Positions 4,865-57,215 of a DNA stretch of 64,000 bases are shown here, one piece after another. Below the pieces are notes generated by a model. That model was not told the DNA's origin. It saw nothing but the letters and a program-made list of their open reading frames with translations, and did no database searches. Source of the stretch: Neoconidiobolus thromboides FSU 785. Its lineage: Eukaryota; Fungi; Entomophthoromycota. How positions within the stretch are numbered: position 1 is the stretch's first letter; every line of letters begins with the position of its first letter. The position numbers were made by a program, and so were the translations under genes. The stretch spans positions 45,365 to 109,364 of the forward strand of contig MU626319.1 in NCBI GenBank assembly GCA_025603075.1. Reading direction: 5' to 3'.

Positions 4865-6220
4865 TTAATAAATTCCAGGTAAAATCCTATATGGAACTAA
4901 TTGTCGATATTTTAACCAAGTTTTACCATATTTTTTACTACATTCATAATCATCTCTTGAATCTCTATGAATTAATAAAATAGCAAAATATCCAGCAAAG
5001 AAGTAGGGAATAATACTACCAAATCCGGTAGCTAAACATTGAGAAAGGGATAATAACCAATCACCTAAATAATTAATATGAGAAGCAATACCCCACCAAC
5101 CATCAACTAATAATTTTCGTCCAGTATCTGATTCGATATAATTTAAATGAGCTACTTTTGGATCTTTATGATTTTTTTTGAAGATATTCTTTTCATTATT
5201 TGCTAATCTGAAAATGGAATAACCCATACAAGAAGTCACTGCTATCAATGCTACACTAAAATAAGACATTTCTATTGGGTGAATCGAGAGATAACGAGTT
5301 TGTATGGAATAAAAAAAAGGAACCCAAGATATATCTCCAAAACATAACATAAACCCAAAGCCATCAGTAGTTATATCCATAGTAGTCAAGACTGCTTCTT
5401 CATTATATAAAGAATCAGCTACATAAAAATATTGACAAATAGTAACAAAAAGAATTGAATATGTGTAAGTGTTATTCGTATCTATTTGTTTTAATAAAAA
5501 ACAAAAATTCAATAAGGACCATCCCATTAATCCAGGTCTCAATTCAAAAAATTGTTTTAAATCTAAATTACCAATACTTGGATTTAACTCTCTACCCATA
5601 AAAAAATCATGAATTAAGCTATCTGTATTACCACTTAATGATAATAATTTGTTATCTTCTCCGATAAATGAATTAATATATAACAAAGTTGACATTACAA
5701 ATGTAAATATTAAACTACTTAATAATAATTCAAAACAGATATCCACAACAAACAAAAATGGAAAAGACCCATACATTTTATAGGTTATTAAAACAATTAA
5801 ATTAGTAATAATAAAGCCTAAAAACCCATTCATTTTATACTTTTGATATTCTCCTGTACGTAATTGAATACCATTGACCCATTTACCAGGTAAAATATAC
5901 CAACAAACTAAATGATATGATAGCCATAATAAATAATACTTCATACCACGTAAAGTTATAAATTCAGTTATATTATTTAATTCAAACGTTACAGAATTGA
6001 TATTAAAAATACTACAACCAAATTCGGAGTTACATGTTATATATTGATAGACTAAAAACAATGGGGAGATAATTGTAATGATTCCAGTACCTAAAGGACC
6101 AAAAAATTCATAACGATGAGATTTGGGGTTTAAAAGAGTATTCCTTTTCTTTAAAGGTTTTGTTGTCATTTTATTACTTTTTTGATTATTAAAAGGAGTT
6201 GTTTGCTTTTTTATATACAC
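4865..6220 (-). CDS. ERG24: Delta14-sterol reductase (ERG4/ERG24 family), intronless
   Basis: 451-aa multi-TM ORF with YEFFGPLG, FFMGRELNP, ELRPGLMGW, DITTDGFGFML, LLVDGWWG..HINYLGDW and LLIHRDSRDD..C..KYG..W..Y. Confidence 0.93.
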   Translation of the reverse strand: MYIKKQTTPFNNQKSNKMTTKPLKKRNTLLNPKSHRYEFFGPLGTGIITIISPLFLVYQYITCNSEFGCSIFNINSVTFELNNITEFITLRGMKYYLLWLSYHLVCWYILPGKWVNGIQLRTGEYQKYKMNGFLGFIITNLIVLITYKMYGSFPFLFVVDICFELLLSSLIFTFVMSTLLYINSFIGEDNKLLSLSGNTDSLIHDFFMGRELNPSIGNLDLKQFFELRPGLMGWSLLNFCFLLKQIDTNNTYTYSILFVTICQYFYVADSLYNEEAVLTTMDITTDGFGFMLCFGDISWVPFFYSIQTRYLSIHPIEMSYFSVALIAVTSCMGYSIFRLANNEKNIFKKNHKDPKVAHLNYIESDTGRKLLVDGWWGIASHINYLGDWLLSLSQCLATGFGSIIPYFFAGYFAILLIHRDSRDDYECSKKYGKTWLKYRQLVPYRILPGIY

Positions 6221-25462: not shown

Positions 25463-28400
25463 TTATTCAATAATAAATTTAAAATCAAAATTAACATTAA
25501 CATCACAATAACCTTGAGGTAATAACATAAGTTTATAATTATAGTCTCCTAATTGATTAGGTGTAATAAATTCTAATTTAGTCGCTACTTCAAATTGTTT
25601 TCTATTATTATTTCCGTTTCCTTTATTATTATTATAGTTAATTGTTATCATTGTTACTTTTTTATTCGCAATAACTTGATTCTTATTTTCATCTACTAAT
25701 AAAACATACCAATTTTTATTTATGTTATTAATATTAATATTATTATTTATAATAACATTGAATATAATCTCTAACATTATTGTTTGATTAATGGAGTATT
25801 TATTACCTTGTAATACAATCTTATTATTCATTTGAACTATTGGATATTCTATCAATTGATTTTCAATTTGTTCTACTTTTTGTTTGTTGATTTTTAATTG
25901 ATTTAATAATATATTCTTTCTCTCTTTTAGATATAACAAATCCTTTAATTCATTCACTGGAGTTTCCAATTTACTCAATTTATTTAATAGTTCATTCCCT
26001 TTTAATTGCTTGATTCTATCTAATGAATTCATTTGTGGCCATTGAGCTTCATTAATCCCTTGAATCAATTGAATTGTAATTAATACTGCTTTAAGATTAT
26101 TAGAATTCAAACATAATTCTAATGTAGCTTCTAAAATATTTAATGTTTTTAAAATTATTTGTTTTAATTCCATTTGAACTTCAACATCAGGTAGATCTCT
26201 ATTAGTCATATGAATCTGTAATAAATTCAATACTTTATAATAAGCTTGAGAGGAATCCTTATTTAATAAACTTAATGGTAATTGATTTTTAATTTCTTCA
26301 TAATACTTTTCTTCATTAAATTTAATTTCATAATTATTAAATTCTTTGACTGAACATATTGTTGTAAATAATAATTCAAAATTCATTTTTTTTAATATAT
26401 TAAAAATATTATTCATTGTTTGACAAGATATTGAATAAATTGAAGCTATTTTTCCTAATTTACTTGAAACTAATGAATCATCTTTACTTTTATCTAAACA
26501 TTTTAAGTAAATTAATTCATCTACTGTTTTATTAATTAGTTGTAATAAATATTCTTCAATAGTCTTAGTATCCTTATCTTTAATCCCATAATAAGCTGGA
26601 TTTTCTATTACTCTTTGATAGAGAAAAGTATTCTTTAAATATTCCATTGCTTGTTTCTTATTTTTGATAATTTTACTAGCAATTTCCCCATTAAATAGAT
26701 CAATCAATTGTTTATTTAATATAGATTCAATTGGAAAAGGTTCATTTAAAAACTTTCTATAAAATTCAACTTTTCGATTATAAACAAATATAGATGTTTT
26801 AGCTGAATAATCTATATTATTTCTACCTGCTTTACTCATCATTTTTAATATTGTAGAAATTGAATGATCTTTATATCCCCTTAAATTAGTATTAAAATAT
26901 TCGGTACCTTTAATGATCACTAATTTAGTACCAAATTGCATTTGATCTGTCATTTGATAAGTTGAGATTAACACTTTAATTATATTATTATTAAATAATT
27001 CTTCAACTAATTTTAAATCTTTTTTAGTTAATCCAGTATGATACAAACCAATTCCAAAACTTAAAGTTAACTTCAAACTTTTATCTGAAATTTGATTGGT
27101 TAATAAATCAAATTCAATTTCACTTAGATTTAAAAATTGTCTCGGATTTTCTTCTAATCCACAAAACGCAATTAAATCTTTAGCTGTTAATAATCCTTGT
27201 TTTCTTGAAGATACAAATACAATTGTTGATTGTTCTTTTGAATAAACTTGGATTTCCTTATAAATAGGTCGATTCATACTTGCCATTCTAGATAAATATT
27301 GATTACCTGGAAATCCAGTTATATTTAATTCTAGCGGAATTGGTCTTACTGAAGGTCGGAAGTTAAAGAAATTGTTATTTTTTATATTCAACCATTTTAA
27401 AAAATCAATTGAATTAGATAATGGAGAAGATAAGCCAATTATTCGAATATTCTGTTGAGTTTGTTGATTTTGATATTTTATACGTGATATAATAATTTCA
27501 ATTAAATGTCCATTTAATTGATCTAATAAATGTAATTGATCTAATAAAATTAAATTAATTTGTTGAAATCCTTTTAATTTATATTTATCTTTAATTAAAT
27601 TATTATAGTCTTCAGGTGTTGTTAATATAATATCGTTAAAATTAACTGCTTTAAAATCATGAATTAATGACCCAGTTAATTCGATTACTTTTTTATTTAA
27701 TAAATTGTTAAATAAATTATTAAATTGCTGTTTTCTTTGACTTAAAAATTGTTTATTTGAATTAATATATACTATTTTACTATTTGGGTTTTGTTGAAAT
27801 GAATTGAAAATAGCTAATTCCATTAATATGTTTTCCCCTGAATTAATTGGTGTAGCTAAAAATACATTATCTAAATCTTTATAAAAGGAATAAAAACAAT
27901 GTGTCTGTATTGGATTAAAATAATTGAATTGTAATGAATAATATTCTTCTAATATAGGATTGTTTAATGCACTTATTGATAATAATTGAGTGTCTAATAA
28001 ATTAGTGTAAATACTAGATAATTGAGGTAATATTAAATTATTTAATGAAACTTCAATTAACGTTTCTGAACCTAACCATCGATCAGATATTGCTCTTACA
28101 TAAATTTTATCTGGTAATGGATCTAATGCTGGTATATTAACTTCTAATATTATGGGATCATTGATTGTTATTTTTTTTAATAATATCTTTTCACTGAAAT
28201 ATAATTCCAATTGACTTTGATCTTCAATCCAAATCCAATAAGCTTCTGTATTACCATGAATTCTATCATTCCATTTAAAATCAGCTTGAATTTGAATTGT
28301 TATCTTTAATACTGTTTTGATTAATGGTTGTACAATCACATTTAAATTAACTAATGGAAATTCATTAATATGTTTATATAATGTGGGTCCTAATCTTTCA

Positions 28401-31400
28401 AAGTTGATTAATTCTCCAATTTGTTTAGCATCTAGTTTACGTAATTCATTAATACTTAATTCCTCTGTTGATTGTTCTAATTTCATTCTTACTGCTTCTG
28501 ATAATTGAAATTGAGCTAATGGATGTTCGAATGACCACATTTGATGTTCAATAGATTTACATAATGATAATAATATATAAGCTGTATTACCCCAATTTCT
28601 ATTTAACGCTACTTCAAAAGTAGAACGAAAAATTCGTGCTGCATTTTGAGATACATAATATAAATCTGAAATCAATGCAAAATCTTCTGGATAACCTTTA
28701 GAAATATAAGTTTGCATTAATAAATTCACTTTATCTGCTGAATTATTAATTCCATTTTTTAAGGGACAAGCAGCCATTTCATACATTAATTTATTTAATT
28801 CATTTGTCTCGTTTTCTCGTACTTTAATATTTTCAAATTCCTTACTACAAGCTACCATTTCAAAACAATCTAATTCTCCCATACGTAATTTCATTTTAGA
28901 ACATAAAATATCCATTGAATTAAAACTAACATAAAATAAGGAAGATATGCGTCCTAAATCTCTTGGTGACATAAATCCTGTTTCAACATCAAAATAAATC
29001 ATATTATTTTGTTGTAATGATTTAGCAGCAGCCACAATCAAACTATGTCTTTTTTTACCTAAATATGGGTCATTAAATGCCTCTTGATAAGTAATGCCAT
29101 AAATCATTGGATTTCTTTGCATACGAATATATAAAAAAGTATAACTTAACCAAGTCACTGCTTCATCAATATTAGCTACAGTACCTAAACATATTTCAGC
29201 ACATAAATTATCAATAATATTATTAATAAAATTCGATTCAATTGGATGTTGTTGAGTAATAGCCGATACAAAATGAGATAATTTATCACCAGTTGTTAAG
29301 ATATAACCAACCCCTTGATCCTCATATTGTGGTCGACCTGCACGACCAAAAATTTGTAATACATCTAAAATGGATAAATCTACAAACGAACCTTTTTGGG
29401 CATCGTAAACTTGAGTACCACGAATGACAACTGCATAAGCTGGTAAATTAACACCCCAAGCTAAAGTAGCTGTACAACATAACAGTTTTAGGGCACCATC
29501 TGCAAACATTTTTTCAGTTAATAATCTATCACTTCTTAACATACCAGCATGATGAGCTCCAACTCCATTTTTGAATAATTCTTTTAATTGATTATTACGG
29601 GATTTAGATACTTCTCTTGAGTAATTTGAATGAACTTCTAAATCTTCTTCCTTAATTGAGAATAAATCTGGAACTCCATTTTCAGCTGCCATTTGAATCA
29701 AAGTTTTAGCTACTCTTACTGTTTCTTTTCTAGTATGAACAAAGACCATAACTTGATGTCCTTCACTTAATAAAGCTTCTACTTTTTCAAAACAAGCTCG
29801 ATCTAAATTTAAATTAGAAATTGGAGTTCCAGGTTTCCCTCTGACACCTAGGAAATGTTGTTCAAGTGGAACAGGACGAAAACCCCCATCAAAAAAGAAT
29901 AAACCTTTATATGGATTTACTTTTAAAAATTTAGATACATCCACATAATTTGGTAATGTAGCTGACAACCCAACAATTCTTATCATAGATTGAGTTGATT
30001 CCACTTGTCTCAATGTACGTGCTACTATACTTTCAATAACCGAACCACGATCATCATGTAATAAATGAACTTCATCAATAACTAATAGTTTTAATTTTTG
30101 AACCAATTCTAAATCTCCAGTCCCTTTTCTCGTAACAACATCCCATTTTTCAGGTGTAGTAACAATAATTTGGGTTTTTAATATTTCATCTTTAGTCAAT
30201 TGCATATCTCCAGTTAATTCTCTTACTTGAATACCTAACCATTTGAGTCTCGTTCCCATTTTAGTTACTATTTCAGTTGCTAATGCTTTCATTGGAGCTA
30301 CATAAACTATTTTAAATGCTGATTTATTAATCTTTAATTGATTCAAATTATCTTTTGTTGGCGTTGGGGTACAATGTGCATATAAGGTACGTAAAATTGT
30401 TAACATAGCTACATCTGTTTTACCAGCACCCGTTGGGGCACATAATAGCATATTTTCATTAGTTTTATAAGCAATTGGATAAACAATAGATTGGACTCGA
30501 TTTAACGAAGTGTATTTCTAAAATCAAACTTAAACAAATTAAAAATATATATTAATATTTAACTTACTTTAAATGTTTCCTTACATAAAGAATCCATGTC
30601 TTCTAAATAAATTGTTTTTTCGCTGGTTCTTGTAGGTGCTCTAGGTTTAATTGGTATTGTAATTTCATCATAATATTCACCAGAAACACGAATAGTACCC
30701 ACCGGTAGATGATATTTGGTACCATAAATAGATAGTGAGTTTTGGCTTGAATTACCTTCTTTAAATACATTTGGATACGATTCTTCTTTTTCCTTTTTTT
30801 TAAAATCATTGATAAATTATTAACGTATTTAACAATTACAAAACTTACTTGTTCAAACCCATCATAATTATTACCTTTACAACTAGGTCCTTTTCTTAAT
30901 GCTTCTTCTCTTAACCTTTTTAATTCACTAGGATTTAAACTTACTTCTTTATCATCCAATTTTCCAATGGTATTTTTATTACTCTTTTTAACTTCTTTGC
31001 GATATTGTTTCATTTGATTTTTTTCTGATTCAAACATAACAGTGACTTGGTTTCCGTACATTGCTTTTGTGTTTTTATTTAATTCCTTCATACGACGGTT
31101 ATGAAACTCTTCTTCTTCTGTAGGTTTATTAAGCTAATATAAAAATTTACTAAAATAAACATTAATTTTTATACATTGATTGTTTTACCTCTTTCCCAAT
31201 CGCCTGTCTTAATTCTTTTTGATAACTAATCAGTTCAGTAAGAAACTCAAAACTATCATAACCAACAAGGTCTAATAACTCATTTTGTATTTCAGCACTA
31301 TCCTTGTTACTGAGTATTATTTTGACAATAGAATCAAATAAATTATCGGAATTTAAGCCAGTATTAATGGCAATTTTATCAGTTTCCTTTAGTAACCATT

Positions 31401-48364: not shown

Positions 48365-51329
<2,965 letters not shown>

Positions 51330-51589
51330 TTTAGTGTATATCACTCTAATATTATAAAAAATAGTAAAAACAACAATAAATCAGAATAAATAAACCAAAT
51401 GATCTAATTTAGTTTAAATTTTAACAATGATTGGCTTACTATCAACGAATTAAATCTTTCCAATGGGTGGCTCAGTTTACTCTATTAAACTACTTTAAAA
51501 GTAAATGCGTATATATGGCAAATTATTAGACTTTTCCATAAATTTGATTGCTTTCTTATAACTACCATTTTTAAGCCCTGTATAGTGAA

Positions 51590-51800
51590 AAATTGGAACG
51601 AGAGCCCAATGATAAAAATTAATGTAATAAACTTGTGTGCTAAAAAAAGAAAGACTCCTATTGAAAAAGTTTATTTATCCTGGGTTTGATAAAGTTTCTT
51701 AACTATATCAATGCCTTAGCCTAATAGAAAAAAATATAAACCCACTTAACTTATTCACACCATTGGCCTCAAAGGAGCTTACGTCCCTTGAATTAAACTT
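51590..51800 (+). ncRNA. Candidate RNase MRP RNA (P4 pseudoknot motifs)
   Basis: GAAAGACTCC (51649-58) and CAAAGGAGCTTAC (51770-82) resemble CR-I/CR-V and can pair as P4. A P2-like long-range pairing links 51600-11 with 51761-70. CR-IV was not recognised and P1 is weak. Confidence 0.4.
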
Positions 51801-52016
51801 GCATTTGAGACGTCACAAAAAGACATTAGAAATTCGAATTGATGGGGCTCCGTATAATTTGTCTCCCTACAGACCCCAAATTGATCTTCGGAAGATTTAA
51901 ATCCAACTAATAGCATATTTTTGGGTAGATTTAATATGCAAAAAAAAAAATTTATTGCGAGTTTTATGTCTATTTAAAATTTTGGACTAAAACATTGATT
52001 TTTCGATCATAAATAT

Positions 52017-52251
52017 GAGTGTTTCAAAGCTAAGTTAAAGTTGAAAATAAAATTTTCTAATTCACTTTTCTGACCATCCCTATAACATAATGTTAAAAAA
52101 TTATTAAAACTGGATAAAAACGTTTCAATATGAGTAATATGAAATTAAGCAAAAAAATAGCTAATCTCATAGTACAAAGGTACTCGCTTAATTTACAATC
52201 TTTGGAAAAAACCAAATTGGACGAAATTTGAATCAAGTTTTTAACTAGCCC
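52017..52251 (+). mobile_element. ~235-bp element (family 2), left copy
   Basis: Reverse complement of 56307-56544 with only 2 substitutions over ~220 bp; begins ATAT|GAGTGTTTC. Confidence 0.85.
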
Positions 52252-52342
52252 ATTTATTAGCTTAAAATAATCAAAACAAAGGCATAGTAATTTAGCAGAA
52301 CAATAAACTAAAATTAAAATACCTTTCTTGTTATAAAATAAA

Positions 52343-54669
52343 ATGAGTAATTTGAATAACGAAGAGCTTCAACAATTCATTAAAGCTTTAGAACCACAAA
52401 AGTAATTTATCATCAAGATAAACTGAACGATTATTAACAATCAAATAGGAACTTGAGAAATAATTTTAATATTGGTAAAGAGAAGATCAATTTTTAAAGG
52501 AAGAGGCTAAATTTACAAATTAGATTTGAATAAAAAATTGAAAGAATATTTAAAACAAATCGAAACTATTTTTCTAGGGTTTAATAATACGGATGAAGGC
52601 CCTAATACTTACAGTTTTTCTCATGGTAAATTATAGTAGATATTAAATTACAATACGCTTATTTTGTATGTATTTAGCTGCTTTAATGCTCCAAAATACA
52701 ACTGTAGTTTATCATCGTAAAGTTGAATATCTATATCAATTGGCATACGCAGAAATGGTAGCGGAAAGGAAGTAATTAAGAAAATAATAAGGTATCTATG
52801 ACTAACTTCAAAATGTTTAGAAACAAATCGAAACATTTTGTTGGAGATAGTATTAGAAATTACGAAGACTATATTAATCAAGAACCTACATCTATTTTTA
52901 ACAACGGAGATTATATTGAAGGTGATAATTAGTAGTATGTACTATGGATTATAGTACTGATAATCTTTATTTAGCATCCACGAACATTGATAATCAAACT
53001 AACATAACTTTAAGTAAAACACAATTAAATATACCAGACTTATTGTTACCTAAAGAAGTAGAACAAAATATTTATCCATTAAATAACACAGTTTATGATC
53101 GTTATGGTAATTCTATTGGAAATTCATTAGACTTTATGGTAATTTAATATCAGAAGTGTAGTAATAAACTTAATATTAGTTTGTTTTATTTAACAGATGA
53201 ACCAGCTGAATTTAAGCCGATCAAATTTTAATTCAGCAATGAATGAGTCGATTGGATCGATTGAGGTTGGCCGTAGAGATAGTAAATATATATACCATGT
53301 TATATAGAAATATACTAATAGTAATGCTACTAGCAACGATGATAGATAATGGAATCGATAATGATTTTTATGATACACTAGGCTTTGATGATTATAATCC
53401 AAAAGATGACCAGAATCAAATTAATTTAACAGAAATGAACAATACTAATTTTGAAATCACCTCGTTGTCCAATGATGACATATTAAATCAATTATTATCA
53501 ACAAACTCAATTATCTTAGATCCCCATCAATCTATCCCTGATTTAGAATCGCCATTAAAAGAAGGTAGCATTAATACAATAATACAATAAAATTATATAA
53601 TGATCTCAATTGTAATAGTCGGACTAAAGGCAGTAATAAGTGATAATGTAGATGATCAAAGGGGTAAAAAGAAGACAAACAGTAAAAACAGTAATTTGGT
53701 ATATTTACTATTTATTTGATATTAACAATAATAGCAAACGACAAAGTATACTATAGTTATTCTACTTCAAATAGGAAATCAAAGAAAAGAAGCAACTTCC
53801 CAGGTAATAGCAAAGTACTAACCAAAGTATTAATTAATAATCATTGACCTTGTTATATTAGAATTAGAGCCGAACGATACTATACAAGAATTAGAAAGTA
53901 AGAAAAGAATCGATGATGCGTATATTGTGGAACAATATGATCAAAGTTTTAGAGACAACTATAATACTTTATTTACTAATTTAGATTTCGAAGTGGATTT
54001 TAACAATGAACAAGTAATAATTATATCAATCATTAAATATTGAATTGTTTTAACTTACTATTTTAGTACAATGATGAATCATCTTCATTTAATAATGACA
54101 ATAGTCAATCTCATTGGATAGATAATGAAAAGTACAATCAAATGGTGATACTATTAATTAATTGAATTGATATTGTTAATATTAACATCAATCTTAGAAA
54201 CCATTTTTAGAAGAAGCAGTTAGATTCGAATCCCAATTGGAATGTAAATTGAGTAGGAAAGTCAAACATTGGGATCACCATATTAAAAAGATATTAGCTG
54301 AACAAGTAAACATCAACGCTATATAAATTATGAAAATATTAATATTATATTAGAACAAAAAACCGGTATTCAACTTGTCAACTTATCAAAATAATATAAA
54401 TAACTGGTTACAATGTGGTATGTTTTGTTATTAATAATGTAGCTTAATGTATTTATATATTTTATAGATGAAGAGTTGGATTTCAAATCCAAGTTTAATC
54501 ATTCAGATCCCAAAGAAATTTCACGTTACTTTTTGGCTACTCTACATATGGTAATTTTAGTTTTAATTTTATTATATGACTATATAGTATTATTTTCAAG
54601 GCACAAGACAGTCATATTTCTATTGCTAGTTCAGATTCTTTGGAAAACTTTGTTATTATTAAGCAATAA
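52343..54669 (+). CDS. NCAPH2: Condensin II kleisin-beta subunit CAP-H2 (NCAPH2), ~16 exons, reading frame intact
   Basis: Manual GT-AG splicing gives an open ~500-aa frame: FIKALEPQKNLRNNFNIDLNKKLKEYLKQIE..FSHAALMLQNTTVVYHRKVEYLYQLA; YDRYGNSIGNSLDFMMN; LDPHQSI; LSRKVKHWDHHIKKILAEQNKKPVFNLSTY; EISRYFLATLHMAQD. These follow the human NCAPH2 N, middle and C motifs in order. Confidence 0.85.
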
Positions 54670-55319
54670 AATATAATCATAAGTTAACTTTATTGTTTTT
54701 ACATCCCTTTAAAGACGATGTAGCTTCTGAATAAAGTACCCTTTTTTTTGAAATTAAGATAGAATTTTAAAACTAGCTACATTTAATTAAAACTGAATAC
54801 TCAAACAGTAACAAACTGATTTTTCATCTTCTCATTATTAATTTAAGTTTGACGTTTTTCATTATATTATGATATTTTAAAACATGATCTCTTCAGTGTA
54901 CTACCATCAATTATTCTAAAATAATCTTACTTCGTTAAAAAATCTATAAATAGCTACTTAGTATTTTGTTGATTGGATGAATCTAGCTAAACAAATTTTG
55001 ATTTGAGGACAGCTTTTAAAAGCAATGTTTGATTAGTCAAAGCAATAAAGTGCTATTATTGGGTGTATATATCAAAGTATTGTTTCTAATAATTGTTTAA
55101 AATTATGAACTTAGATGAAGTCAAAGACTTCAAAATTTGATTATCACAATTCTACAAAAACATCTCGCTGTTAGCTTTTCAAGCTTCTAAGCCTATCCAC
55201 CCTCTACAATGTTTTTTGGTAAACAAAAACAAGGTCAGAAGGACTTCGAAATTATATAAATTAGTGATTAAAAATATTTTCGTTTTTCCATCTTCCAATC
55301 ATATTCATTACCTAAGCTC

Positions 55320-55495
55320 CAATAATCGCGCTTGAATAGTTTTTTACAAATTCAATCATTTTTCAAAAGCGCGTTTTTTTGATCCAAGTTTGAATTTTGA
55401 AATCTTGAAATTTCAAAACTTTCTAAATAAGGCAACCCAATTTGAATCTCATTATTTAAATTGAAACGAAAAAAAGAATTCAAAACTATAAAAAG
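55320..55495 (+). promoter_or_regulatory. Histone H4 promoter: two CGCG cores and a TATA box
   Basis: TCGCGC at 55326, GCGCGT at 55369, TATAAAAA at 55487, and CCAAT motifs just upstream. Confidence 0.45.
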
Positions 55496-55538
55496 AGAAC
55501 TTAAATCTTAAATCTTAATTTATTAAACTTCAAATTAA

Positions 55539-55853
<315 letters not shown>

Positions 55854-56306
55854 AGTTAGCAAGCTTTCTAAATAACCTATTTATCGCTTTTGCAAACTAT
55901 ATTTAAAATAAACCTTGAATAGTAGTCTATATTTTTCCTCACTATTGTATCTCTTTTCTTCTGAGCTGAATCTATGTTGTTTTAATAAAAAAAATATGTT
56001 TAATATTTAATGTTCTGCTAATATTATTAAAAGCGTTATTAATCTCCCAAATGATTTGCTATTAAGCTGAAATAAACAATAATTAAGCAAGTGGTGATAA
56101 AGGCAACATTAAAAGGTGCTTCATAACTTTTGCCTTTAGCTAACAGATTTTGTTCCATCTAAAACTGCTAACCAGAACTATTCCCTATTCAATCAATAGA
56201 GAAAGTACTGAGATACTTACAACTTAGTGTTAAACAGTGATTTATAGTCTATTTTTAAATACATTTGATTTCTTATTTTTTTATGTTAAATATGATAATT
56301 GAATAT

Positions 56307-56544
56307 GAGAGTTAGTTCAAAAACTTGGTTCAAATTTCGTCCAATTTGGTTTTTTCCAAAGATTGTAAATTAAGTGAGTACCTTTGTACTATGAGATTAG
56401 CTATTTTTTTGCTTAATTTCATATTACTCATATTGAAACGTTTTTATCCAGTTTTAATAATTTTTTAACATTATGTTATAGGGATGGTCAGAAAAGTGAA
56501 TTAGAAAATTTTATTTTCAACTTTAACTTAGCTTTGAAACACTC
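56307..56544 (-). mobile_element. ~238-bp element (family 2), right copy
   Basis: ATAT|GAGAGTTAGTTCAAA...TTTGAAACACTC|ATAT: imperfect self-TIR with GAG/CTC termini and ATAT flanks. Confidence 0.85.
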
Positions 56545-56547
56545 ATA

Positions 56548-56571
56548 TTAGAATTAGAATTAGAATTAGAA
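56548..56571. repeat. (TTAGAA)4 microsatellite
   Basis: Direct reading, adjacent to the family-2 element end. Confidence 0.8.
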
Positions 56572-57215
56572 CTTTCCAATTTTTAGAACTTTGGGAGAGT
56601 AACCAGCTTACAAGTGTTTTACTTTTAAAGGAATGAAAGTGTAAAAAGTTAAGGTGGAAAAGCAAAAATGAAGTAACGAGATATTAAAGTTAATGCAAAT
56701 AGAAAAATATTATGGTTTCCTATGTGTTAAAAAGGTAAATTAGTGTTAATAAGCTCTAATTCTGATAGTTAAAGCTACTAGTAAAGGATCTAATACTTAC
56801 CATTAATGTGATAGCAAGTTTAATTAAAGTAAAATAAAATAAAAATTCATAAAGTTTTACATTTCCCATTTAATAACCTACAGCTTTACTACTGTTACTC
56901 TGCTTCACTAAAGTAAAAATACGACTAACTCTAAGACATACTTTCTAATATGTATAGTGAAATCGATTGATGTTTAAAACATGTTATTATTAAATAAACC
57001 AAAACCTATTTTAAATAGTCAAATTTGAAAAGCTTATTTAAAAATTTAAAAATCACTTTATTATCCTATTAAATTTAAATTAATAGTATTATAAAGTTCA
57101 TATATTATTGAAAAACAATATGAGTATTTTTATAAATGTATTTTAAATTTTAAGTCATTTATTCGACTTGTTTAATATACATAATACTTGTTAATTGTAT
57201 ATAAATAAAATTAAC

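What the first reader, a model, noticed from the sequence alone, without database searches (positions are those of the whole stretch)
52343..54669. Intact condensin II subunit CAP-H2 in a fungus, hidden in ~16 tiny exons
Seen: about 15 GT-AG introns can be removed to give one open frame. Its N-terminus (F..LEP.KNL..NFNID...L.EYL; AALMLQ....Y.RKVEYLY.L), middle (G..IG...DF.MN; LDP) and C-terminal winged-helix (LSRKV..W...I..IL..Q...P.F....Y; EISRYFLA.L.M) parallel human NCAPH2 rather than Brn1/CAP-H or Rad21/Rec8. Established: Dikarya use only condensin I, and condensin II presence correlates with chromosome-territory versus Rabl-like genome folding. Inference: this lineage retains condensin II, which bears on when fungi lost it and predicts a non-yeast-like 3D genome.
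Basis: partly seen in the sequence, partly recalled or inferred. Interest (0 to 1): 0.85.

Follow-up and report, generated by a model that had tools for sequence, protein, structure and literature searches.

The report
Expressed CAP-H2 kleisin in Neoconidiobolus
An insect-pathogenic zygomycete fungus, Neoconidiobolus thromboides, carries an intact, spliced, expressed gene for CAP-H2, the kleisin subunit of condensin II, a complex that the literature reports as lost from fungi except in the chytrid Gonapodya; the public annotation shows only a 124-residue fragment of it.

Summary
At 52343-54669 (+), 16 exons (26-231 nt) and 15 GT-AG introns (44-58 nt) give one 518-codon frame. Spliced RNA contigs from four coded organisms/studies show the junctions, a 5' end at or before 52273 and a poly(A) site near 54687.

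It is a CAP-H2:
- Exon 4 alone hits Pfam CNDH2_N (E 2.5e-7), and its only PDB match is human NCAPH2.
- A profile of 34 CAP-H2 proteins, built without window rows, aligns the spliced protein end to end at 124.7 bits (best of 200 shuffles 4.8).
- The N-terminal domain scores 76.7 bits and the C-terminal winged helix 48.9. The mid domain is not significant.
- No other kleisin family appears.

Variants in diverged transcripts are mostly synonymous (pN/pS about 0.12).

The scaffold is N. thromboides FSU 785 (Entomophthoromycotina). GenBank holds only a 124-aa fragment model here. Published tables score related fungi 0/0/0 for condensin II and find it only in Gonapodya.

I could not test CAP-D3 and CAP-G2 in this genome, because I had no query I could pass by reference. 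Only unchecked first-stage notes of this scan report them, on other pieces of the genome.

Verdict: a real new fungal member of a known family, of moderately high interest.

The parts
52273..54687 (+). Transcribed unit of the CAP-H2 gene: 5' UTR of at least 70 nt, 16 exons, 18-nt 3' UTR
   Evidence: The 1653-nt and 1635-nt spliced contigs of runs X6 and X8 start at 52273. A loose end of run X5 at 54687 continues as poly(A).
52343..52401 (+). Exon 1 (start codon, aa 1-20)
   Evidence: ATG at 52343. Junction 52401|52449 is seen in X6 and X8. It aligns to profile positions 3 onward.
52449..52474 (+). Exon 2 (26 nt, aa 20-29)
   Evidence: Junctions are seen in X6 and X8. Loose ends at 52523 in X1 and X4 spell the end of exon 2.
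52524..52625 (+). Exon 3 (aa 29-63), part of the N-terminal domain
   Evidence: The joint 52624/52677 (cut +1) is seen in X1, X4, X5, X6 and X8.
52678..52771 (+). Exon 4 (aa 63-94), core of CNDH2_N (AALMLQNTTVVYHRKVEYLYQLAY)
   Evidence: Pfam PF06278 CNDH2_N, E 2.5e-7 and 31.2 bits for this exon alone. Its only PDB match is human condensin-2 subunit H2, 9f5w_H residues 57-80. Joint 52771|52821.
52821..52921 (+). Exon 5 (aa 94-128)
   Evidence: RNA joints.
52975..53138 (+). Exon 6 (aa 128-182), holds the G..IG...DF.M motif of the mid region
   Evidence: RNA joints. It aligns to the profile's 'GealgerndfrlN' stretch, but this is not significant alone.
53197..53281 (+). Exon 7 (aa 183-211)
   Evidence: RNA joints 53138|53197 and 53281|53334.
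53334..53564 (+). Exon 8 (aa 211-288), variable D/N-rich linker ending in the LDPH motif
   Evidence: RNA joints. LDPHQS aligns to the family's DPW..LDPH.
53619..53690 (+). Exon 9 (aa 288-312), basic K-rich stretch
   Evidence: RNA gives the donor at 53691 (joint 53690|53735), not the alternative in-phase GT at 53664.
53735..53803 (+). Exon 10 (aa 312-335)
   Evidence: RNA joints.
53862..54013 (+). Exon 11 (aa 335-385)
   Evidence: RNA joints.
54067..54144 (+). Exon 12 (aa 386-411)
   Evidence: RNA joints.
54198..54305 (+). Exon 13 (aa 412-447), start of the C-terminal winged-helix domain (KLSRKVKHWDHHIKKILAEQ)
   Evidence: Pfam PF16858 CNDH2_C, E 0.028 for this exon alone. It lies within the 48.9-bit C-domain match, aa 412-508. 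RNA joints.
54354..54417 (+). Exon 14 (aa 448-469)
   Evidence: RNA joints. It aligns to the family's 'rPFDIhkYgee' stretch.
54468..54550 (+). Exon 15 (aa 469-496), EISRYFLATLHM helix of the winged helix
   Evidence: Joint 54417|54468. It aligns to 'yeVcRlFlAsLqLaN'.
54601..54669 (+). Exon 16 (aa 497-518, then TAA)
   Evidence: RNA depth is present over 54602-54685. The length of the 1653-nt X6 contig fits only if intron 15 is removed.
53239..53719 (+). The only gene model in the deposited annotation at this locus: a 124-aa fragment (internal Met of exon 7, exon 8, exon 9 read through into intron 9)
   Evidence: the look-up of encoding contigs shows NCBI GCA_025603075.1 MU626319.1 with a 124-aa product and no Pfam hit. 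Its sequence is P0001.

Best explanation
The gene encodes the CAP-H2 (NCAPH2) orthologue of Neoconidiobolus thromboides FSU 785, a fungus of Entomophthoromycotina, Zoopagomycota. CAP-H2 is the kleisin of condensin II. Shown here: the gene is intact, transcribed, spliced at all 15 short introns, polyadenylated, and under purifying selection. Its N-terminal and C-terminal domains are recognisably CAP-H2 and not any other kleisin family. Inferred from the established architecture of condensins: the N-terminal helical domain binds the SMC2 neck and the C-terminal winged helix binds the SMC4 head, which closes the SMC2-SMC4-kleisin ring. The poorly conserved acidic and basic middle part would carry the HEAT subunits CAP-D3 and CAP-G2. 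The complex would extrude DNA loops and compact chromosomes lengthwise, alongside condensin I. The most likely history is vertical retention from the opisthokont ancestor. That implies several independent losses of condensin II within fungi rather than one early loss.
For: - Gene model: one 518-codon frame from 16 exons.
- RNA: spliced contigs from runs of four coded organisms/studies give the junctions, the 5' end and the poly(A) site.
- Family: exon 4 alone hits Pfam CNDH2_N at E 2.5e-7, and exon 13 hits CNDH2_C at E 0.028; no other family appears at E<=10. The only PDB hit is human condensin-2 subunit H2.
- phmmer of the spliced protein against metagenome ORFs that Pfam confirms as CNDH2_N+M+C gives 84.6 bits with collinear N and C matches.
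- A profile of 34 animal, choanoflagellate, plant and stramenopile CAP-H2 proteins, built without window rows, scores 124.7 bits. The match covers aa 2-508 against profile positions 3-585 of 621. The best of 200 shuffles scores 4.8 bits.
- Domain profiles: N 76.7 bits, C 48.9 bits.
- Constraint: 24 synonymous and 13 nonsynonymous changes among the 37 listed variants, for 285 versus 1269 sites, so pN/pS is about 0.12. The indels are in frame.
- Organism: the SLH1/ASCC3 helicase on the same scaffold is the 100% match to N. thromboides FSU 785. Its next relatives are Entomophthora, Massospora and Conidiobolus at 64%.
- The gene's composition and introns match its neighbours.
- Tree: the protein lies inside the opisthokont clade (99/97). 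A position as sister to Holozoa is not rejected (AU p 0.48).
Against: - Partner subunits CAP-D3 and CAP-G2, and also SMC2 and SMC4, were not examined in this genome. Only unchecked first-stage notes claim CAP-D3 and a shortened CAP-G2.
- The mid domain, where the HEAT subunits should bind, is not significantly similar to the family (1.4 bits against 7.1 for shuffles).
- The protein is very divergent: at most 26% identity to any sampled CAP-H2, on a branch of 3.9 changes per site. Its exact position in the tree is therefore unsure.
- Full-length Pfam scoring of the spliced protein could not be run, because the spliced sequence has no reference.
- No biochemical or cytological evidence exists.
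Confidence: 0.88

Rival explanations
1. Orphan or repurposed kleisin: CAP-H2 survives and is expressed, but one or both HEAT partners are gone. This would resemble Drosophila, which lacks CAP-G2. The protein would then act in a reduced or different complex, not a canonical condensin II.
For: The mid region that should bind CAP-D3 and CAP-G2 is not significantly conserved. The branch is very long. The first-stage note describes the CAP-G2 candidate as divergent and N-terminally shortened. Insects show recurrent partial losses of the complex (PMC6759200, listed).
Against: Both SMC-binding ends are conserved and the gene is under purifying selection. First-stage notes report both CAP-D3 and CAP-G2 candidates in the same genome; these are unchecked.
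Confidence: 0.15
2. Horizontal acquisition: the gene entered this insect-pathogenic lineage from an animal or another eukaryote instead of being retained from the fungal ancestor.
For: The protein falls in a clade with Metazoa and a choanoflagellate, and its position inside that clade is unresolved. For Gonapodya, the authors could not exclude transfer (10.1101/2024.01.07.573240). Close relatives are scored as lacking the complex.
Against: It is not nested in any animal subgroup. Sister-to-Holozoa, the position expected for a fungus, fits as well as the best tree (AU p 0.48). Identity to any animal protein is at most 26%. The gene has 15 host-type short AT-rich introns and native composition. 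No arthropod sequences were in my sample, so this remains open.
Confidence: 0.07
3. It belongs to another kleisin family (a divergent CAP-H/Brn1, Rad21/Rec8 or Nse4) and resembles CAP-H2 only in short motifs.
For: All kleisins share an N-terminal helical domain and a C-terminal winged helix. I had no sequences of the other families with which to build competing profiles.
Against: Pfam at E<=10 returns only CNDH2_N and CNDH2_C, not Cnd2 or Rad21_Rec8. The only PDB match is NCAPH2. The CAP-H2 profile match runs the full length at 124.7 bits. Separate Rec8-like kleisins and a condensin I YCG1 are noted elsewhere in the genome; these notes are unchecked.
Confidence: 0.02
4. It is a decaying relic, an assembly contaminant, or a chance open frame made by choosing splice sites.
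For: The official annotation has no full model here. Many GT and AG dinucleotides exist in AT-rich DNA.
Against: Independent spliced transcripts reproduce the junctions. A diverged strain or species keeps the frame, with in-frame indels and mostly synonymous changes. The gene sits on a 109-kb scaffold beside genes whose closest relatives are Entomophthorales.
Confidence: 0.02

Closest known systems
Human NCAPH2 (condensin-2 complex subunit H2; PDB 9f5w chain H; Pfam CNDH2_N / CNDH2_M / CNDH2_C)
   Same: It has the same three-part order. The N-terminal domain carries the AAL.Q....VY.(R/K)KVEYLY.L motif. The middle has the G..(I/L)G...DF.MN and LDPH motifs. The C-terminal winged helix carries LS(R/K)(R/K)V..W and E(I/V).R.FLA.L motifs.
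   Different: It is shorter: 518 aa, against the 640-residue chain deposited in PDB 9f5w. Identity to the animal proteins sampled is at most 26%. The mid domain falls below significance. The linker is D/N/K-rich and of low complexity.
Condensin II of Gonapodya prolifera and Gonapodya sp. JEL0774 (Monoblepharidomycetes), the only fungal condensin II reported in the papers I could search
   Same: It is a fungal CAP-H2 in a kingdom otherwise described as lacking condensin II (PMC10246852; 10.1101/2024.01.07.573240).
   Different: The lineage differs: a non-flagellated terrestrial zygomycete (Entomophthoromycotina) rather than a zoosporic chytrid. In Gonapodya all three non-SMC subunits are reported; here I verified only CAP-H2. 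I could not obtain the Gonapodya sequence for comparison.
CAP-H / Brn1 (condensin I kleisin, Pfam Cnd2) and Rad21/Rec8 (cohesin kleisins)
   Same: They share the kleisin logic: the N-terminus binds one SMC neck, the C-terminal winged helix binds the other SMC head, and the middle binds HEAT subunits.
   Different: No Pfam or PDB match to these families from any exon at E<=10.

Membership tests
CAP-H2 / NCAPH2 (condensin II kleisin) | N-terminal CNDH2_N domain (the SMC2-neck-binding helices) | tested here: met
   Exon 4 alone scores 31.2 bits, E 2.5e-7, on PF06278 (whole-protein cut-off 32.3). A domain profile from 34 CAP-H2 proteins scores 76.7 bits over aa 11-98, against 6.7 or less for shuffles. 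The only PDB hit is NCAPH2.
CAP-H2 / NCAPH2 (condensin II kleisin) | C-terminal winged-helix domain CNDH2_C (the SMC4-head-binding part) | tested here: met
   Exon 13 alone gives E 0.028 on PF16858. The domain profile scores 48.9 bits over aa 412-508, against 7.4 or less for shuffles. phmmer to Pfam-verified CAP-H2 C-domains gives E 1e-9 to 1e-11.
CAP-H2 / NCAPH2 (condensin II kleisin) | Mid domain CNDH2_M | tested here: inconclusive
   Only a short collinear motif (aa 164-185, G..IG...DF.MN) and LDPH are present. The domain profile scores 1.4 bits, below the shuffles at 7.1. Some bona fide diatom CAP-H2 proteins also lack a Pfam CNDH2_M hit.
CAP-H2 / NCAPH2 (condensin II kleisin) | Full-length collinear match to the family, better than chance and better than other kleisin families | tested here: met
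   124.7 bits, aa 2-508 against profile positions 3-585 of 621; 200 shuffles score 4.8 or less. No Cnd2, Rad21_Rec8 or Nse4 hit at E<=10 for any exon. Competing full-length profiles of other kleisins were not available.
CAP-H2 / NCAPH2 (condensin II kleisin) | Official Pfam gathering thresholds passed by the whole spliced protein | not testable with these tools
Only single exons could be scanned.
Condensin II complex | CAP-D3 and CAP-G2 encoded in the same genome | not tested
   I had no query for these proteins that could be passed by reference. Only first-stage notes s1-241671 (CAP-D3) and s1-263705 (CAP-G2, 'divergent, N-terminally shortened') exist, and they are unchecked.
Condensin II complex | SMC2/SMC4 core present and bound by the kleisin | not tested
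   Not examined. A condensin I YCG1 note (s1-064778) implies that condensin exists in the genome. Binding needs experiment.
Functional gene | Transcribed, correctly spliced, polyadenylated, under purifying selection | tested here: met
   Spliced contigs in runs X1-X6, X8 and X9, with poly(A) at 54687. 24 synonymous against 13 nonsynonymous listed variants, pN/pS about 0.12.

The most novel reading that the evidence does not exclude
Entomophthoralean fungi retain a complete, working condensin II inherited vertically from the opisthokont ancestor. In that case condensin II was lost several times independently within Fungi. The published 'absent' calls for relatives such as Conidiobolus coronatus would then be at least partly artefacts of missed many-intron gene models. 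This lineage would give a second, culturable fungal system, alongside Gonapodya, in which to test whether condensin II presence changes Rabl-like folding into chromosome territories.
Probability: 0.45. Interest if true: 0.72.

Novelty: new member of a known kind. Interest (0 to 1): 0.62.

Why it matters
Reviews and recent preprints still state that fungi lost condensin II. The exception is Gonapodya, whose origin (retention or transfer) is called unclear (PMC10246852; 10.1101/2024.01.07.573240; 10.64898/2026.07.21.739809).

An expressed, constrained CAP-H2 in a distant, non-flagellated fungal lineage has three consequences:
- It favours retention with repeated losses over a single early loss.
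- It shows that proteome-based presence/absence tables can miss such genes. The deposited model here is a 124-aa fragment without domains.
- It nominates a culturable fungus for Hi-C and cytology to test the proposed link between condensin II and chromosome territories.

The weight of all this depends on confirming CAP-D3 and CAP-G2.

Tried and rejected
1. Whole-library search with exon 8. It returned only the 124-aa annotated fragment and two low-complexity hits, so it gave no full-length relative.
2. Metagenome scan with exon 4. An alignment with the 24-residue human peptide printed gave 80 loci. These supplied bona fide CAP-H2 ORFs by reference, but none is a close relative of the window protein.
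3. Two profile searches for fungal relatives. The lists are capped at 120 rows and filled with diatom, plant and animal CAP-H2 proteins. The window's relatives would score about 140-150 bits and stayed below the cut. Truncating the first row did not narrow the length filter.
4. Placing window exons in alignments. MAFFT scatters short fragments unless several full-length rows guide them.
5. Synteny route to a Conidiobolus coronatus CAP-H2. The neighbourhood of its SLH1/ASCC3 gene shares nothing with the window, so I dropped this.
6. Single-exon PDB searches for exons 3, 6 and 13 found nothing.
7. Rfam on 50000-57000 found nothing.
8. Sequence-only choice of the exon 9 donor at 53664 was overruled by RNA, which gives 53691.
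9. I left out a scan of the full spliced protein against Pfam, structure prediction of it, and any CAP-D3/CAP-G2 search. None of those sequences has a reference.
Full report
**Observation**

The stretch 52343-54669 (+) lies in very AT-rich DNA: the window runs 20-36% GC. Three-frame translation shows open pieces that switch frame every 60-230 nt. Joining them at GT-AG boundaries gives one frame.

RNA evidence corrected one donor. With that change the model has 16 exons of 26-231 nt and 15 introns of 44-58 nt (mean 51 nt, 19.7% GC). Donors are mostly GTAAnn, and 13 of 15 acceptors are TAG. The CDS is 1557 nt, or 518 aa, ending in TAA at 54667-54669.

**RNA evidence**

Public runs holding this stretch were found in four coded organisms/studies.
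- Run X1 holds a 1422-nt contig identical to the window. Three runs of organism B were laid with it. Together they show GT..AG joints at exactly the predicted introns 3-14. They place the exon 9 donor at 53691 rather than the in-phase alternative at 53664.
- Runs X6 and X8 (organism C) hold 1653-nt and 1635-nt contigs of a form mostly 90-95% identical to the window. These start at 52273 and show introns 1 and 2 and most of the others. Their length fits only if introns 14 and 15 are also removed.
- A loose end in run X5 at 54687 continues as A20. This marks a poly(A) site 18 nt after the stop codon.

The gene is therefore transcribed, fully spliced and polyadenylated.

The diverged form keeps the reading frame; for example it has an AAG insertion after 53402. 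Of the 37 exonic differences that the tool listed, 24 are synonymous and 13 are not. With 285 synonymous and 1269 nonsynonymous sites, pN/pS is about 0.12. Another 22 differences were not listed.

**Family assignment**

The spliced protein has no reference, so public-library tools could only take single exons.
- Exon 4 (30 aa) alone hits Pfam CNDH2_N at E 2.5e-7 and 31.2 bits; the whole-protein cut-off is 32.3. Exon 13 hits CNDH2_C at E 0.028. No exon hits Cnd2, Rad21_Rec8 or any other kleisin family at E<=10.
- Exon 4's only match among all PDB chains is human condensin-2 subunit H2, 9f5w_H residues 57-80.

To test the whole protein I fetched CAP-H2 genes from metagenomes. The query was an alignment of exon 4 with the human peptide printed. 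Pfam confirms several of the resulting ORFs as CNDH2_N+M+C at E 1e-13 to 1e-52.

In the sandbox, the spliced protein matches these ORFs at up to 84.6 bits. The N-terminal match (aa 12-188) and the C-terminal match (aa 412-507) are collinear.

I then built a profile from 34 CAP-H2 proteins of animals, a choanoflagellate, plants, stramenopiles and metagenome ORFs, with no window rows in it. It scores the spliced protein at 124.7 bits in a single alignment covering aa 2-508 and profile positions 3-585 of 621. The best of 200 shuffles reaches 4.8 bits.

Profiles cut to the Pfam domain limits give:
- N domain: 76.7 bits (aa 11-98).
- C domain: 48.9 bits (aa 412-508).
- Mid domain: nothing significant. 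It scores 1.4 bits at aa 164-185, which is the correct position, but shuffles reach 7.1.

So the two SMC-binding ends are clearly CAP-H2.

**Organism and annotation**

The exon 8 search returned a 124-aa protein. It maps to NCBI GCA_025603075.1, scaffold MU626319.1, which is 109,364 bp. The window corresponds to positions 45365-109364 of that record.

That 124-aa product is the only gene model between the NSF/SEC18 gene and histone H4. It starts at an internal Met of exon 7 and reads through intron 9, and it has no Pfam hit. The 'hidden' part of the finding is therefore literal.

The 1662-aa open stretch of the SLH1/ASCC3-type helicase at 25463-30451 (-) matches at 100% a protein named for Neoconidiobolus thromboides FSU 785 on a contig of the same length. 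The next relatives are Entomophthora muscae, Massospora cicadina and Conidiobolus coronatus at 64%. The host is therefore a fungus of Entomophthoromycotina (Zoopagomycota), an insect pathogen. The gene's GC, GC3 and intron style match its neighbours, which argues against contamination.

**Phylogeny**

In a maximum-likelihood tree (LG+C20+F+G4, 625 columns) the protein falls inside the clade of animal and choanoflagellate CAP-H2 proteins (support 99/97). It is separate from plants and stramenopiles.

Its terminal branch is very long, at 3.9 changes per column. Identity to any sampled sequence is at most 26%, and its position inside the clade is unresolved. Holding all holozoan rows together with the fungal protein outside, which is the species-tree position, costs no likelihood (AU p 0.48).

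Vertical inheritance is therefore compatible with the data. Transfer from an animal is not excluded, because I had no arthropod or Gonapodya sequences, but nothing points to it.

**What is known**

A 2023 review states that fungal genomes do not encode the condensin II accessory subunits, except in Monoblepharidomycetes (PMC10246852). Its Supplementary Table 2 scores CAPH2/CAPG2/CAPD3 as follows:
- Conidiobolus coronatus: 0/0/0.
- Basidiobolus meristosporus: 0/0/0.
- Gonapodya prolifera: 1/1/1.

A 2025 preprint analysing 177 eukaryote proteomes found condensin II in fungi only in two Gonapodya species. It calls the history of the complex in Fungi unclear, with horizontal transfer not excluded (10.1101/2024.01.07.573240). 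A 2026 preprint still speaks of 'the loss of Condensin II in Fungi' (10.64898/2026.07.21.739809).

No paper in the library pairs condensin II with Zoopagomycota. The one that pairs it with Conidiobolus uses C. obscurus only as a phylogenetic outgroup. N. thromboides was not named in the text I read of those surveys. A CAP-H2 in this lineage is therefore a new member of a known family in an unexpected place.

**Mechanism**

Shown: an expressed, constrained kleisin with CAP-H2-type N and C domains.

Inferred from the established condensin architecture: the N domain binds the SMC2 neck, the C-terminal winged helix binds the SMC4 head, and the linker recruits CAP-D3 and CAP-G2. The holocomplex would extrude loops and compact chromosomes axially, next to condensin I.

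The inference to a complete complex rests on two first-stage notes of this same scan, on other pieces of the genome. One reports CAP-D3 (s1-241671). The other reports a divergent, N-terminally shortened CAP-G2 (s1-263705). I could not check either. Other notes mention a condensin I YCG1 and Rec8-like kleisins, which fits CAP-H2 being an additional kleisin and not the only one.

Published exceptions run both ways: Plasmodium and Dictyostelium have condensin II and a Rabl-like arrangement, while Physcomitrium lacks it and has territories.

**Verdict**

The main open question is whether the lineage keeps the whole condensin II complex.

Interest is moderately high. The finding contradicts a widely repeated generalisation, exposes an annotation blind spot, and makes the retention-versus-transfer question for fungal condensin II testable. 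It remains a new member of a well-known family, with one subunit verified.

Noticed in passing
window 52012-52242 and 56319-56549: A 231-nt inverted repeat, 99% complementary, brackets the CAP-H2 and histone H4 pair with 4076 nt between the arms. These are the only two full copies in the window. The flanks of a 1067-nt RNA contig of run X1 match the surroundings of the arm at 56319-56549, so that arm lies in a transcribed stretch. The arm at 52012-52242 ends 100 nt upstream of the CAP-H2 start codon.
   Followed up: partly
window 53239-53719 (record MU626319.1): The deposited GenBank annotation represents the 16-exon CAP-H2 gene by a single 124-aa fragment model with no domain hit. Exons 1-6 and 10-16 are unannotated. 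Short-intron, many-exon genes in this assembly may be under-called more widely.
   Followed up: yes
window 52273-54690, runs X2-X6 and X8: Runs of coded organisms B and C carry a second form of the transcript, mostly 90-95% identical to the window. It has in-frame indels (for example AAG after 53402) and mostly synonymous changes. In organism B it sits beside a form nearly identical to the window. It could be a second haplotype, strain or sibling species.
   Followed up: partly
window 4865-6220 (-): This single-exon sterol reductase (ERG4_ERG24 family) is nearest, by Atlas features and structure, to animal TM7SF2/DHCR7/LBR-type clusters rather than to Dikarya ERG24 clusters.
   Followed up: no
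L023, L025, L034, L036 (bog/peat metagenome contigs, GC 55%): These contigs carry an intron-bearing CAP-H2 gene of unknown organism. It has the highest N-terminal identity to the window protein (40% over aa 19-94) and a clear C-terminal domain. It could come from another little-sampled lineage, possibly fungal.
   Followed up: partly
window 25463-30451 (-): A 1662-codon uninterrupted exon of the SLH1/ASCC3-type Sec63 helicase (2022 aa in the annotation). It stands out in a genome where CAP-H2 has an intron about every 100 nt.
   Followed up: no
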